This document shows, one piece after another, positions 29,075 to 43,910 of a stretch of DNA of 64,000 nt (its first letter is position 1; each line of letters starts with the position of its first letter). The notes under the pieces were generated by a model. The model searched no databases and had not been told where the DNA came from. It saw only the letters and a list, made by a program, of their open reading frames with translations. This DNA comes from Hypanus sabinus. Taxonomy: Eukaryota. Made by a program: the position numbers and the translations under genes. The stretch is from NCBI RefSeq assembly GCF_030144855.1, contig NC_082715.1, positions 117,614,001-117,678,000 on the forward strand, written 5' to 3'.

Positions 29075-29860
29075 CTTCTTCTTGTGAAGTTTAATGGCAG
29101 TTGGTAGACCAACACAAGGTACATTACTGCCGCTTACTGAGTTGGAGTGTGGAGCAAATTCTACCCACCATAAAACTCCAATAATATCAAGAAGTCTTTT
29201 GCTTTTCAGAAAGTCAAACTTGCACTTCTATACATTACAATGGCAGTGATATCCTAACAAACTTTCAATGTTAAACAGTGTCTGTCCCAAAGATCTCAAT
29301 TTAGGAATTAGAAGTTTCCTTTGCACCTCATAGGATCTGCACTCGAACAATATCGGCTGCACCTTTTCTTGACAAGTGCACTCCCCACAAATGCCTGTAA
29401 CATGCATATTAATGCTGAACATGGAATTATTTAACCTGGTATGTCCAGTACATAAACATGTAAGTATAACTTTCTCCCTCCTTTTAAACTCATCTCCCAG
29501 TTGAGTTCTTACCATCCTCTGATTTTATATAAATCCCATTCTTTCATTTCCTTATCCTAACTTTGTTGCCACAGTTATTGAATAGAATTTATTAATTATG
29601 GCTTTTACCTCGCCTTTATGCAAAGCCACCACTATTTTTATAGCCTTCATTTTAAGTGATTGCTTGGCAAGAGTGTCTGTCACCTCATTTCCTTCAACCC
29701 CAATATGGACAGGAGCCCGTGTGATATGTATACACAAGCCTAGACCCTGCAGCCTCAATGGCTGTCCAATCTCAAGAAGAATGTCTGGCCTACAATTTGA
29801 AGTACCCATCTTAATAGCTGTCAAGTCTGAAATCGAACCAGAGCACAGAAGTACATTTGG
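29075..29860 (-). mobile_element. 5'-truncated I/Nimb-clade LINE (RNase H + CCHC) inserted into XDH exon 34
   Basis: RNase H end APVHIGVEGNEVTDTLAK, then LCTGH and CGEC...ILFEC; 3' tail (AAG)3. Confidence 0.8.
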
Positions 29861-29963
29861 ATCTTGTAGGTGACTGGATTCCAGGTGTATGAACTCCATC
29901 CGATGAATACCATAACTCATCCAAAGTGAAGATGATGAGGCCCTGTGCAAAACATCCTTCCAC
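29859..29963 (-). pseudogene. XDH: XDH exon 34, 5' half, frameshifted and truncated by a LINE
   Basis: VEGCFAQGLIIFTLDELWYSSDGV/(frameshift)YTWNPVTYKI vs [36 protein letters not shown]. Preceded by a long polypyrimidine tract (purine run at 29965-30110 on +). Confidence 0.9.
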
Positions 29964-30909
29964 CTGCACCAGAGGGAAGAGGGAGAGAGAAAAAGATAAA
30001 GTGAGAGAATAAAGAAAAACAAAGAAAAACACCAAAGGATGAGAAATTGAATGAGGGAGAGGGAGAGAGAATGAGAAAGAGAGAAAGAAGGGAAAGGAAA
30101 GAAAAGAGAATCAGTTCAGCCAACTACCAGCAAACTGGCCTTTAACCCTTCATCTTCCCTCCTTTTGATTTAACAAGGGAGATGTTAAACTATCTACCTT
30201 CACTGGTTGATCCTGTGTTCATTCTTCAAGGTGGTCAGGTGATCTCTTCTCGAATTCTGCTATCCAGGGTTTATATATCTCTTAAGGAGCTTTCCTAGAA
30301 TTGATAGGTGGCTGGATAGGGGTGGCCAGCGGCAGCGCACATCCCAGTTCCTGGGTATAAAATTCAAACCCAACCTCAGACAGGCCAAGCTGATCTCAAC
30401 CCAATGTTCAAAGGTCAAAGTTCAAAGTAAAATTTACTATCAGAGTACATACAGGTCACCACGTACCCAAGTCCCTTGGCTTAATGTCTATAGTCAACCA
30501 AACACTGAATAGGTGCAAGTTCACTGCTCACAGCTATGCCTGCAGGCATTTCAAGGGGTTACTGAATATACTGTATTCCCAGAGAAAGGCTATTCGGTCC
30601 ATCTAATCCAGCAGATTTGCCCTGACCTGACCCAATTTGAGCCTGAATGTCTGACTCAGAATATATAACAGAACTGAACTCGGTGCCTTCCTACAGGTCT
30701 TAATTTAGGTGCAAAGTGAATTCCAAGAGTCAGATGTGACCATGATTGTTAACTCTCACTATTTTACAGAAGCAGTACCACATTGTGAAGTAGCTCATTG
30801 GCTGTAAGCTGACCTTCGACATGCTGAGATGCAGGAATCCCGGCCGACTTTCCCCACCACTCCTGTTAACACCAGGGCACTTATTCCTTGCGCAGCAAAG
30901 GAAGCTCAC

Positions 30910-30975
30910 CTGCCCAATGTCCAACGCCTGGTTCAGGCTCATGCTGACATCCAAGACAATGTCAGTGCAGAGATC
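30910..30975 (-). pseudogene. XDH: XDH exon 33 remnant
   Basis: 66 nt, AG and gtgagc intact. [22 protein letters not shown] vs [22 protein letters not shown]. Confidence 0.92.
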
Positions 30976-31905
30976 CTGAAATCAAAGTACTCTGAGTGAC
31001 AAAGGGTTAGTTGAACTTGCCAGAAAGCTGCTTCACATGTTGCCAAGAAGCAGGACTGATTAAACACTAGTCCATGTGATTCACAGCTAAAGGAATGCCA
31101 CCCATGTTTCCACATGACATGGAACGGGACTCTTTGACCCTTTGCTCGCTCAAAGAGCAATCCCAGTTTCTCATTAGTTGATCCTTTGATCTATTCTCAT
31201 CAACTTCTCCCAAACTCTGCACTCACCTATATACTAGGGACAAAGAACCTGTCAATGCTTGATATGTGGGAAAAGACCAGAACACTCAGAACACTCCATG
31301 AATTATATTTTATTAACTGATTTATGGTAATATTTTGGTTTATGTGCTGTGTGATATATGCTTTGTGGATGCACCATGGTCCGTAGGAATGTTGTTTCAT
31401 TTGATTGGATCTATGTACAATCAGATGATAATAAACTTGAACCTGAATTTAGAAGAGTGAGAGCAGACTTGTCTAATTCTGAACTTCTTAATGGAGTGGA
31501 TGTGGAGAGGATGTTTCCCCCTCTGGGTGATTCTAAGGGTCACTTTTCTAAAACAAAATAGCTGACAATTGCTCTTAAAATGGTAGATAATGGTGGAGCA
31601 TACTCAATATGATGAGTGGCCTAATTCTGCTCCTATGACATGGTTTTATTGTCTTTTAGACAAAAGAGCAAAATATTTTCTCTCACAGGATTGCGAAAGT
31701 TTGGAACTCTTCTCTAAAATGCAGTGGAAGTTAAGTCTTTGAATTTTTTAAGGCAAAGATAGGTGGATATTTGATAAGCAAGAGGTTATAAAACTAATGA
31801 AGGAGACAGGAATGCGGAGGTTTTAATCAGATTAGACGTGATTTTATTAAAAAGTAAAGCAGGTTCAAGGGCTTGAGAGGTTCACTCCTGTTCCAATGTT
31901 TTTAC

Positions 31906-32020
31906 CTTGTGATCCCCAGTGAGACAGACAACTTCAACTTCAGAATAAACCACACCATAACTGAAGCCAGGGTAGAGCTTTCCTTTGTTTTCACTCTAGT
32001 TATGGTTCAGATCCCAAGTC
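31906..32020 (-). pseudogene. XDH: XDH exon 32 remnant with stop
   Basis: 115 nt. [37 protein letters not shown] vs [38 protein letters not shown]. TAG at 31996-31998. Confidence 0.92.
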
Positions 32021-41671: not shown

Positions 41672-41751
41672 CAGAGGTTCCCAAACTGGGATCCACAGAG
41701 CCTTCAGTTAATGATAAGGCTCCATGCCATTAAAAGTTTTGGGAGCCCCTG
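41672..41751. mobile_element. 80-bp hAT-like MITE
   Basis: TIRs CAGAGGTTCCCAAAC / TTTTGGGAGCCCCTG; imperfect 8-bp TSD CAGTACAT / CAATACAC. Confidence 0.75.
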
Positions 41752-42696
41752 CAATACACTGTACAGAAAGCTTCACATTATCAATGTCATGTACATACAG
41801 AATTCCCCTCTTCTCTATTCACCTCACTCTCACAGGCTAAATGCCCACAAGAAAATGTATCTCAGGGTTGTTATGGTGACATATATGTACTTTGATAATA
41901 TTTTTACTTTGTACTTTAAAAATGTTGCTTCTCTCTGACTCTTAGTTGAACCAATCCAAATTTGATGTTCCTGTTACTTGGAACCTCAGTTCCAGAACCA
42001 GAGTCAGGTTTATTGTCACTGACGTAAATTCAGAAACTTGTTGTTTTGTGGGAGTAGTATGGTGCAGACTAAATAAGTAAATTTACAATAAAACTAATGA
42101 AGCAAATATTGCAGAAGAGCAACAGTAAGGTCGTGTTGATGGGTTCACGAACCATTCAGAAATCTGTAGGCAAAGGAGAAGAAGCTGTTCCCATCTTAAA
42201 CTGAGTGGAAGAGCTTATGGTGAGATTTAAAATTTGTCTGAGAGCAGTATGATTCAACATGTTGAAGGAGTGCTGCAGGGATGTAACTTTGTATTGCGTA
42301 CAGCATGTACATTTTCTGACGGTTATTTGGAAGGTCTGCGATCCTGTCTGCACTCACTTGCACCACCTAAATTACACACACACCCTCCTGTTCATTGATC
42401 ACCTGGTTTCTCCATGGAATGTGTGTCAAAGTTTTGGCTTTTATTTTTGCCAGAACAGAAAAGGAGACCATTGAGCCCATCAGGTCCATGCCAACTCCAA
42501 GGTGAGAGTAACCCTATCAGTCCTAGGCAGCCTACTTATCTTCTTGTACCCTGCAAATTTATCTTCTCTCATCAGTTCCCCTTGGATTATTTTGCTCCAT
42601 CTCTGCACAAAAGGTTAATTTACAATGGCTCATTAACCTCCCAGCACATCTTTGAAATGTGAGAGATGGCTCTGGAACCAAATGAAATCTGCAGAG

Positions 42697-43455
42697 TGTC
42701 GTGGATATTCTCTTTCAGACCCCAAAGGGCTCCGTCCTAACATTGGGTTTTTTTTTGGCCCAGAAGCAGAACTGTCCAAGGTTCACGAAGTTTGTTGTTC
42801 ACTAAGATAAATTCATTTTTAGCCCAGCAGCAGAAAATGTCCACGGGTCAAGTGTTTGTTGTTCATTAAGCCCAGCAGAAGAAATTGCCCAAGATTCAAG
42901 ATGTTTGTTGTTTAATAAGTTAAATTTCTAACTGGGATACTTTGCTCATATTCTTCACTTCTAACCAGTTGGCTTTGGCTTAATCAAGAGAAACAATGGG
43001 TCCATGCTGAACTTGTTGAACTATGACCCAATCAAGAGAAACAAGGGTATCTCCATTAGACTAATTAAATACACCATCTTCCTAACCTGATAACCTGCTG
43101 AGAAACATCACATGCCAATGATGACAATTGATAGAAAAACAGTATAAATATTAGAAGGCAGTCACAGTTGGGAGAATCGATAGAGTGAAGAAACAGGATT
43201 CATTCCTCTGCCTTGGTTTCGGCAACGGATGACTTGTTCATCTTCAACTCTTTGGTACGTCTTTCTAGATTTTAAGAAATCTACCTGCATTTGGAAATCC
43301 TTTAAGTTATACATCTGTCTGGAATTATACCTCAGAAATTAATATGTTTCACTTAAAAATAAACTGTGTTTAATCTGCACCATTAGCTGGAAGTATCGTC
43401 TCCTTGGTGGCGAGGGGAGGGTGCAATAGTGATTACTAACAGCTGACCCCTTTCA
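42697..43455 (+). mobile_element. Putative solo LTR in XDH intron 5
   Basis: TG...CA termini, three ~45-bp tandem U3-like repeats (42758-42920), TATAAAT near 43143, AATAAA near 43358. No clean TSD seen. Confidence 0.6.
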
Positions 43456-43783
43456 GGAAGAGATTAAATAAGTGAAAGTAAATGAGTCTGGTTGAAGTAA
43501 ACTAGTGTAGATTAATACAGTGTAATCTCACTAAAATGCAGGTTTTTGTAGATATTTAAACCAGATGTGGCTTAGTTTTGATTAAGCTTATCACACACAA
43601 AATCATCACAACAGCTGCAGGGAGATGGTGCAAACTCCAGAGAGAGAGAGTTGGGCAGGAATAATCCTGCACATGTGGAGCTATGAGGCAACAGAACTAA
43701 CTGTTGCACCAACAGGCCCCCCCTTTGAAACTGGTCTCTCTGCTTAAAAGTCTGGAACTGAGCCACAAACTTAGAGAATTTAC

Positions 43784-43910
43784 CTTGGAGGGTGTCTTCA
43801 ATTTCCTCCATTGTGGGATCCAGGTTGCTCTGAAATAAACAGTATACAGACATGACAATTCTAGCGATGCAGAATCCTCACTGGGAACTGTGGGCCTTTG
43901 CAATATGCTC
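43784..43910 (-). pseudogene. XDH: XDH exon 5 remnant (2Fe-2S domain) with in-frame stop
   Basis: 127 nt, AG/GT intact. [42 protein letters not shown] vs XDH [43 protein letters not shown]. TGA at 43878-43880 replaces an Fe-S ligand Cys. Confidence 0.93.

What the first reader, a model, noticed from the sequence alone, without database searches (positions are those of the whole stretch)
29859..43910. Fossil XDH gene: possible loss of xanthine oxidoreductase in this lineage
Seen: eight XDH exons in correct order with native splice geometry but with stops (43878, about 34443, 31996), frameshifts (exons 29, 31, 34) and dead splice sites. Known: XDH catalyses hypoxanthine to xanthine to urate and is normally single-copy in vertebrates; the SPTAAS and PTMEEIE motifs argue against AOX. 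Inference: if no intact copy exists elsewhere, this animal cannot make urate by the standard route, which would be notable in a urea-retaining elasmobranch. It could instead be a dead duplicate.
Basis: partly seen in the sequence, partly recalled or inferred. Interest (0 to 1): 0.78.

Follow-up and report, generated by a model that had tools for sequence, protein, structure and literature searches.

The report
Dead duplicate of stingray XDH gene
This is a broken, partly deleted leftover copy of the xanthine dehydrogenase gene in the Atlantic stingray; a separate XDH gene is annotated on the same chromosome, so it is an old dead duplicate and not evidence that the animal lost the enzyme.

Summary
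The minus strand of 29859-43910 holds remnants of eight XDH exons (5, 6, 29-34 of 36). They are in native order with their introns. Exons 1-4, 7-28 and 35-36 are absent from the window.

The headline reading, loss of xanthine oxidoreductase, is not supported. A 319-aa protein encoded in the window matches, residue for residue, a protein of the Hypanus sabinus assembly GCA_030144855.1. It lies on the 167,937,546-bp contig that also carries the annotated XDH gene. Exons 1-33 of that gene are as conserved as in other stingrays.

The relic falls inside the batoid XDH clade (99/98 support). Its introns still align with sawfish XDH introns at about 74% identity. Its first and second codon positions have changed almost as fast as its third, so it evolved nearly neutrally since it split from the sawfish XDH lineage. 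Contigs of four other coded organisms hold the same relic at about 98% identity, and some lesions are younger than their split.

Caveat: all H. sabinus XDH protein models lack the canonical exons 34-36. I could not check this on DNA.

The parts
43784..43910 (-). XDH exon 5 remnant (2Fe-2S domain II). Full length, 127 nt, AG/GT kept. The Cys codon of CGFC is now TGA at 43880-43878, and TPG has become IAR.
   Evidence: Pfam Fer2_2
40775..40836 (-). XDH exon 6 remnant ([13 protein letters not shown]). 62 nt, no stop or indel, AG/GT kept.
40583..44938 (-). Block 1: the 3' part of intron 4, exon 5, intron 5, exon 6 and the start of intron 6. Collinear with Pristis XDH locus L001 20327-24101 at 72-81% identity.
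   Evidence: also collinear with the second Pristis copy L003
34896..40582 (.). A 5.7-kb gap that replaces about 42 kb of the Pristis gene holding exons 7-28. No XDH homology. It holds retroelement fragments on the + strand: RVT_1 at 37724-38092 and zf-RVT at 38668-39579.
34500..34627 (-). XDH exon 29 remnant ([18 protein letters not shown]). The acceptor AG has become AA, and there is a 1-nt deletion near 34509.
34389..34463 (-). XDH exon 30 remnant with TGA at 34445-34443. Its acceptor and first 4 nt were lost in a 59-nt deletion at 34458/34459. Organisms B, C and D do not have that deletion.
32646..32697 (-). XDH exon 31 remnant with a 1-nt deletion. The donor GT has become CT.
31906..32020 (-). 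XDH exon 32 remnant, the 115-nt form found in most XDH genes. TAG at 31998-31996 replaces the Trp codon of NYNW.
30910..30975 (-). XDH exon 33 remnant, 66 nt, no stop or indel, AG/GT kept.
29859..29963 (-). The first 106 nt of XDH exon 34, with a 1-nt deletion at 29891/29890 that organisms B, C and D lack. Homology to XDH ends abruptly at 29859.
29859..34895 (-). Block 2: the 3' end of intron 28 through exon 34, collinear with Pristis L001 66178-71169. Over both blocks, 5683 aligned nt, mean identity is 74.2%.

Best explanation
This is a non-processed (duplication-derived) pseudogene relic of xanthine dehydrogenase in the Atlantic stingray, Hypanus sabinus. A genomic copy of a batoid XDH gene, introns included, arose on the chromosome that still carries the working XDH gene. 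It escaped selection early and has since decayed. It lost exons 7-28 in one or more large deletions, with retroelements now in the gap. It lost exons 1-4 and the region beyond the middle of exon 34. It gained stops, frameshifts and splice-site mutations in the eight exons that remain. It cannot encode an enzyme and has no role in purine catabolism; urate formation depends on the separate XDH gene. Shown here: the anatomy, the lesions, the XDH (not AOX) and batoid origin, near-neutral evolution, presence in related organisms, and an annotated XDH on the same contig. Inferred: that the copy arose by segmental duplication around or after the sawfish-stingray split, and that the annotated XDH is functional.
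For: Anatomy: exon borders coincide with those of the 36-exon Pristis gene, and the introns align collinearly at 74% identity over 5.7 kb. This rules out a retrocopy. Origin: the relic lies in the batoid XDH clade at 99/98, and only XDH chains were found in the PDB. Neutrality: on the relic's branch since the split from Pristis, codon positions 1+2 changed by 0.18 and position 3 by 0.205 substitutions per site, a ratio of 0.88. The same ratio is 0.14 on the skate branch. The protein end branch is 0.53 against a median of 0.05. Source genome: the window's ORF 50346-51302 is, residue for residue, an NCBI protein seen on one contig of 167,937,546 bp in GCA_030144855.1. The H. sabinus XDH isoforms lie on a contig of the same length in the same assembly. 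Live copy: exons 1-33 of that XDH have 2 unique changes at otherwise invariant columns, against 1-2 in other stingrays, and 17 versus 10 unique changes against Hemitrygon (p=0.25). Precedent: Pristis pectinata keeps two intact XDH genes 208 kb apart on one chromosome. Continued decay: contigs of four other organisms hold the relic at about 98% identity, and the exon 34 frameshift and the 59-nt deletion are missing in three of them.
Against: I could not read the DNA of the H. sabinus XDH locus because the file is too large. All four of its protein models end by reading through the exon 33 donor and lack exons 34-36, which encode the AVGEPP motif; from textbook knowledge this motif holds the catalytic glutamate. 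So 'intact XDH elsewhere' is shown for exons 1-33 only. Distance and orientation of the relic relative to XDH on the 168-Mb chromosome are unknown. The time of the duplication is not resolved. The AU test allows the relic as sister to the four stingrays (p=0.47) or to Pristis (p=0.41).
Confidence: 0.87

Rival explanations
1. Unitary pseudogene: this is the lineage's only XDH, so the stingray cannot make urate by the standard route.
For: The relic is clearly dead. The annotated H. sabinus XDH models lack canonical exons 34-36, so a fully intact copy was not demonstrated.
Against: An XDH gene with 33 conserved canonical exons is annotated on the same contig of the same assembly. The relic has evolved almost neutrally along nearly its whole branch since the split from the sawfish XDH lineage. 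Yet Hemitrygon and two Mobula species carry full-length XDH, and H. sabinus has conserved exons 1-33.
Confidence: 0.03
2. Partial segmental duplication: only two pieces of the XDH gene (intron 4 to intron 6, and intron 28 to exon 34) were ever copied here. On this view the locus never held a complete or functional second XDH gene.
For: Only two blocks of homology exist, with sharp ends at about 44938, 40583, 34895 and 29859. The branch looks neutral almost from its start.
Against: Both blocks lie in native order and orientation, 5.7 kb apart, with retroelement debris between them. This is what deletions in a full copy would leave. Two independent fragment copies landing in order is less parsimonious. 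Pristis shows that whole-gene XDH duplicates occur in batoids. The data cannot separate the two histories.
Confidence: 0.12
3. Assembly artefact, such as a misjoined haplotig or a chimeric contig, and not a real locus.
For: None specific.
Against: The sequence is about 20% diverged in exons from every XDH compared. It is also found, with its lesions, in contigs of four other organisms' sequencing runs.
Confidence: 0.01

Closest known systems
Non-processed (duplicated) pseudogenes of vertebrate genomes
   Same: It keeps the parent gene's exon-intron structure and splice sites. It carries stops, frameshifts and deletions. It evolves neutrally. A parent gene exists elsewhere on the same chromosome.
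   Different: It is unusually old and fragmentary: 8 of 36 exons remain, and the neutral branch is about 0.2 substitutions per site. Its introns can still be aligned with a different order of rays (sawfish).
Functional XDH of batoids (Hypanus sabinus XP_059838734, Hemitrygon akajei, Mobula, Pristis pectinata)
   Same: It shares exon borders, batoid-specific residues ([33 protein letters not shown]) and intron homology.
   Different: About 70% protein identity over the 237 columns that can be compared. The Fe-S cysteine codon is a stop. The FAD domain and most of the Mo domain are missing.
Pristis pectinata XDH gene pair (XP_051880287 and XP_051880700)
   Same: It shows that XDH has been duplicated on one chromosome in a related ray.
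   Different: Both sawfish copies are intact and differ by about 3% in the eight exons compared. In those exons they group together to the exclusion of the relic (19 versus 3 and 1 informative sites). The relic therefore comes from a separate, older event, or from one masked by gene conversion.
Vertebrate AOX genes and AOX pseudogenes (products of older XDH duplications)
   Same: They are also XDH-derived paralogs, some of which have died in particular lineages.
   Different: The relic has XDH-type motifs, gave no AOX hit in the PDB at E<0.01, and branches inside batoid XDH, not with AOX.

Membership tests
Xanthine dehydrogenase (XDH), as opposed to aldehyde oxidase | Sequence groups with XDH orthologs and not with AOX | tested here: met
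   The PDB phmmer search of exon 29 returned only XDH/XO chains at E<0.01. The ML tree places the relic in the batoid XDH clade at 99/98.
Xanthine dehydrogenase (XDH), as a functional enzyme | Complete Fer2, Fer2_2, FAD_binding_5, CO_deh_flav_C, Ald_Xan_dh_C and MoCoBD_1/2 domains in an open frame | tested here: not met
   Only fragments of Fer2_2 and MoCoBD_2 are present. There are three stops and three frameshifts, and 28 exons are absent.
Non-processed (duplicated) pseudogene | Retains the introns and exon borders of the parent gene | tested here: met
   Exon ends coincide with Pristis exons, and introns are collinear at 74% identity over 5683 nt.
Non-processed (duplicated) pseudogene | A parent or paralog gene exists elsewhere in the same genome | tested here: met
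   The window's own 319-aa protein and the H. sabinus XDH isoforms both lie on the 167,937,546-bp contig of GCA_030144855.1. Exons 1-33 of that XDH are conserved. Its last three exons are not in the protein models.
Non-processed (duplicated) pseudogene | Evolution without coding constraint | tested here: met
   On the relic branch the ratio of change at codon positions 1+2 to position 3 is 0.88, against 0.14 on the skate branch.
Unitary pseudogene (gene loss) | No other copy of the gene in the genome | tested here: not met
   An XDH gene is annotated on the same contig.
Processed pseudogene (retrocopy) | Intronless, with a poly(A) tract and flanking target-site duplications | tested here: not met
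   Introns are present between all adjacent exon remnants.

The most novel reading that the evidence does not exclude
The Atlantic stingray's remaining XDH gene may itself be crippled. All four annotated protein isoforms read through the exon 33 donor into intron 33 and end in a short foreign tail. They lack exons 34-36, which in the other XDH sequences compared here encode the AVGEPP motif; from textbook knowledge this motif holds the catalytic glutamate. If that reflects the real gene and not an annotation or assembly problem, this euryhaline ray would have lost xanthine oxidoreductase activity very recently.
Probability: 0.05. Interest if true: 0.7.

Novelty: new member of a known kind. Interest (0 to 1): 0.2.

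Why it matters
The main value is as a correction. A striking 'gene loss' candidate is an ordinary dead duplicate, so no unusual purine or urate metabolism should be inferred for this ray from this locus. There are two secondary points. First, the relic has introns still alignable to a sawfish gene, a neutral branch of about 0.2 substitutions per site, and lineage-specific lesions among close relatives. That makes it a usable neutral marker for substitution rates and for dating in slowly evolving batoid genomes. Second, XDH has been duplicated at least twice in batoids: this relic, and the intact sawfish pair.

Tried and rejected
- A word-indexed protein search with the 74-aa exon 29 ORF found nothing. 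The length window excludes full-length XDH, so this is not informative.
- The representative-library search with the same ORF gave mostly short fragments and one abalone XDH. I used that only as a stepping stone to shark and ray XDH sequences.
- DNA of the stingray XDH loci could not be fetched, either because the gene range exceeds 100 kb or because the file is too large. This applies to Hemitrygon, Mobula hypostoma, M. birostris and Hypanus. Two isoforms are not on record. So there is no nucleotide comparison of the relic with its own genome's XDH.
- The skate locus L002 aligns with the window only in exons, so it gives no outgroup for introns.
- I first read the tail ISALTLSWMSA of Mobula birostris isoform X4, which is identical to an alternative-frame reading of the window's exon 33, as a possible splice into the relic. 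I rejected that. Skipping exon 32 of Mobula's own gene gives the same peptide with ordinary synonymous codons (and reasoning).
- The foreign tail of the H. sabinus XDH models (SVQCGTAVVI) is not encoded anywhere in the window.
- Three paper searches on XDH/AOX pseudogenes in sharks or elasmobranchs returned nothing relevant.
- Position within batoids: nesting the relic with Mobula alone or with Hemitrygon+Hypanus alone is only marginally disfavoured (p about 0.045). Nesting with skates or with Narcine gives p about 0.075. The timing of the duplication stays open.
- UOX, URAH, URAD, ALLC and MOCOS were not examined.
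Full report
**What is in the sequence**

Stop-free minus-strand segments between 29.8 and 43.9 kb contain clear XDH peptides: [12 protein letters not shown]...[82 protein letters not shown] and QVEGCFAQGLIIFTLDEL. Pfam gives partial Fer2_2 and MoCoBD_2 matches. A PDB search of the exon 29 ORF returns only xanthine dehydrogenase/oxidase chains, with rat XDH at 1.6e-9, and no aldehyde oxidase.

Through a representative search and two homolog searches I obtained full-length XDH proteins from 15 cartilaginous fishes. 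I also obtained the genomic locus of Pristis pectinata XDH (L001), and a spliced match reconstructed its 36 exons exactly.

**Anatomy**

BLASTN of each Pristis exon against the window, followed by global alignment, places eight exon remnants. They are exon 5 (43910-43784), exon 6 (40836-40775), exon 29 (34627-34500), exon 30 (about 34463-34389), exon 31 (32697-32646), exon 32 (32020-31906), exon 33 (30975-30910) and the first 106 nt of exon 34 (29963-29859). Matches begin and end at the Pristis exon borders.

- TGA at 43880-43878, which replaces a cysteine of the second Fe-S cluster motif.
- TGA at 34445-34443.
- TAG at 31998-31996.
- One-base deletions in exons 29, 31 and 34.
- The exon 29 acceptor changed from AG to AA, and the exon 31 donor from GT to CT.

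Exons 6 and 33 carry no lesion. A profile HMM of vertebrate XDH run against all six frames of the whole window, and BLASTN of all 36 exons, found nothing for exons 1-4, 7-28 and 35-36.

**It is an unprocessed copy**

The window aligns collinearly with the Pristis gene across introns in two blocks. The first is 44938-40583 against L001 20327-24101. The second is 34895-29859 against L001 66178-71169. Together they give 5683 aligned nt at 74.2% identity.

Intron lengths are similar in the two species. Introns 32 and 33 are about 0.93 and 0.95 kb here, against 0.73 and 0.81 kb in Pristis. Between the two blocks, 5.7 kb of unrelated DNA with retroelement fragments replaces 42 kb of the Pristis gene (RVT_1 at 37724-38092, zf-RVT at 38668-39579). 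Homology stops in the middle of exon 34 at 29859.

**Which gene it comes from, and how it has evolved**

A maximum-likelihood tree of the 244 comparable protein columns puts the relic inside the batoid XDH clade (99/98) on an end branch of 0.53, against a median of 0.05. Its position among batoids is unresolved. The AU test allows it as sister to the four stingrays (p=0.47) or to Pristis (p=0.41). It only marginally disfavours nesting with Mobula alone or with Hemitrygon+Hypanus alone (p about 0.045).

At nucleotide level I compared 712 exon columns shared with both Pristis copies and a skate:

| Comparison | Codon position 3 | Codon positions 1+2 |
|---|---|---|
| Relic vs Pristis | 0.23-0.24 | 0.18 |
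| Pristis vs skate | 0.32 | 0.07-0.08 |

So the relic split from the sawfish XDH lineage after the skates did. Three-taxon branch lengths put 0.18 (positions 1+2) and 0.205 (position 3) substitutions per site on the relic's branch. That ratio is 0.88, against 0.14 on the skate branch. The copy has therefore been free of coding constraint for most of the time since that split.

Skate introns no longer align with the window. The intron 33 read-through of the H. sabinus XDH models matches the window's at 28 of 32 residues, against 23 of 32 for Pristis. This fits an origin on the stingray side.

**Source genome and the live gene**

Notes of other agents on this genome call it Atlantic stingray, and I tested that lead. 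The ORF at 50346-51302 is, residue for residue, a protein held by NCBI. It was seen on one contig of 167,937,546 bp, and its 90% cluster is led by XP_059838750.1 of Hypanus sabinus. A look-up places it in GCA_030144855.1.

The H. sabinus XDH isoforms XP_059838734-741 lie on a contig of the same length in the same assembly, in a gene spanning 98 kb. Exons 1-33 of that gene are conserved like those of other stingrays. It has 2 unique changes at columns invariant in 16 other vertebrates, against 1-2 in Hemitrygon and Mobula. It has 17 versus 10 unique changes against Hemitrygon (p=0.25). Hemitrygon akajei, Mobula hypostoma, M. birostris, Narcine, two skates, Pristis and nine sharks and chimaeras all have full-length XDH.

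**Distribution and continued decay**

Contigs from runs of four other coded organisms cover the single-copy parts of 29800-34700 at about 98% identity, so the relic is older than that species group. Three of them (B, C, D) carry an extra base at 29889/29890 that removes the exon 34 frameshift. The same three carry 59 extra letters at 34458/34459 that restore the length of intron 29 and the start of exon 30. All four carry 8 letters at 31049 that the window lacks. No contig shows a gap at the exon 29 deletion. The difference tables are truncated, so sharing of the three stops is likely but not proven. These lineage-specific lesions are what neutral decay predicts.

**Context in other rays**

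Pristis pectinata has two intact XDH genes on one chromosome: P0116 at 93.82-93.89 Mb on the plus strand, and P0314 at 94.10-94.18 Mb on the minus strand. They are 84-97% identical along introns in a mosaic pattern. In the eight exons they group together against the relic, with 19 informative sites versus 3 and 1. So XDH duplication on one chromosome has happened in batoids. The relic stems from a different, older event, or from one hidden by gene conversion in the sawfish.

**Caveat and the reading that is not excluded**

All four H. sabinus XDH protein models continue past the exon 33 donor (…DIGQ VSFLCCTRNKC…) and end in a short tail, without exons 34-36. In every other XDH sequence compared here, those exons encode the AVGEPPLFL segment. 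From textbook knowledge of bovine XDH, that segment contains the catalytic glutamate. I could not read the locus DNA, and the tail is not encoded in this window. The normal conservation of exons 1-33 makes an annotation or assembly issue far more likely than a real truncation. This check is still the one that would settle whether the animal has a working enzyme.

**Verdict**

The locus is an old, internally deleted, neutrally evolving duplicate of XDH on the XDH-bearing chromosome of the Atlantic stingray. It is not evidence for loss of xanthine oxidoreductase. It is an ordinary kind of object. Its age and the survival of alignable introns give it some interest as a neutral marker.

Noticed in passing
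H. sabinus XDH proteins P0303, P0302, P0308 and P0307 (not in the window): All four annotated isoforms read through the exon 33 donor into intron 33 (VSFLCCTRNKCTGVKRSGGERRPGFLHLSMS) and end in TSVQCGTAVVI. They lack canonical exons 34-36. Exons 1-33 are normally conserved. This is either an annotation or assembly problem, or a very recent 3' truncation.
   Followed up: partly
L001 (Pristis pectinata CM019864.1, 93.81-93.90 Mb) and L003 (94.09-94.19 Mb): The sawfish has two intact XDH genes about 208 kb apart, tail to tail. Identity along introns is a mosaic of 84-97%, which suggests gene conversion or a recent duplication. Copy 1 lacks 6 codons in exon 32 that all other XDH genes compared have.
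   Followed up: partly
window 50346-51302 (+) and 51466-52437 (+): The first ORF is an annotated 319-aa H. sabinus protein with no Pfam domain. It shares a 90% cluster with a 745-aa 'uncharacterized protein LOC132401028' of H. sabinus and a Hemitrygon homolog. The adjacent 323-aa ORF may be the other half of a broken copy of that gene.
   Followed up: partly
   Followed up: no
Mobula birostris XDH isoform X4 (P0300): This isoform skips exon 32 and ends in ISALTLSWMSA, a frame-shifted reading of exon 33. The peptide is identical to the same alternative frame of the window's exon 33, which implies shared synonymous states between Mobula XDH and the relic.
   Followed up: partly
window 30292-30455, 31276-31767, 31932-32423 and 33408-34063: Very high contig depth in all four runs marks high-copy repeats inside the relic's introns. 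A unit of about 70 nt at 32044-32181 also occurs many times in the Pristis XDH loci.
   Followed up: no
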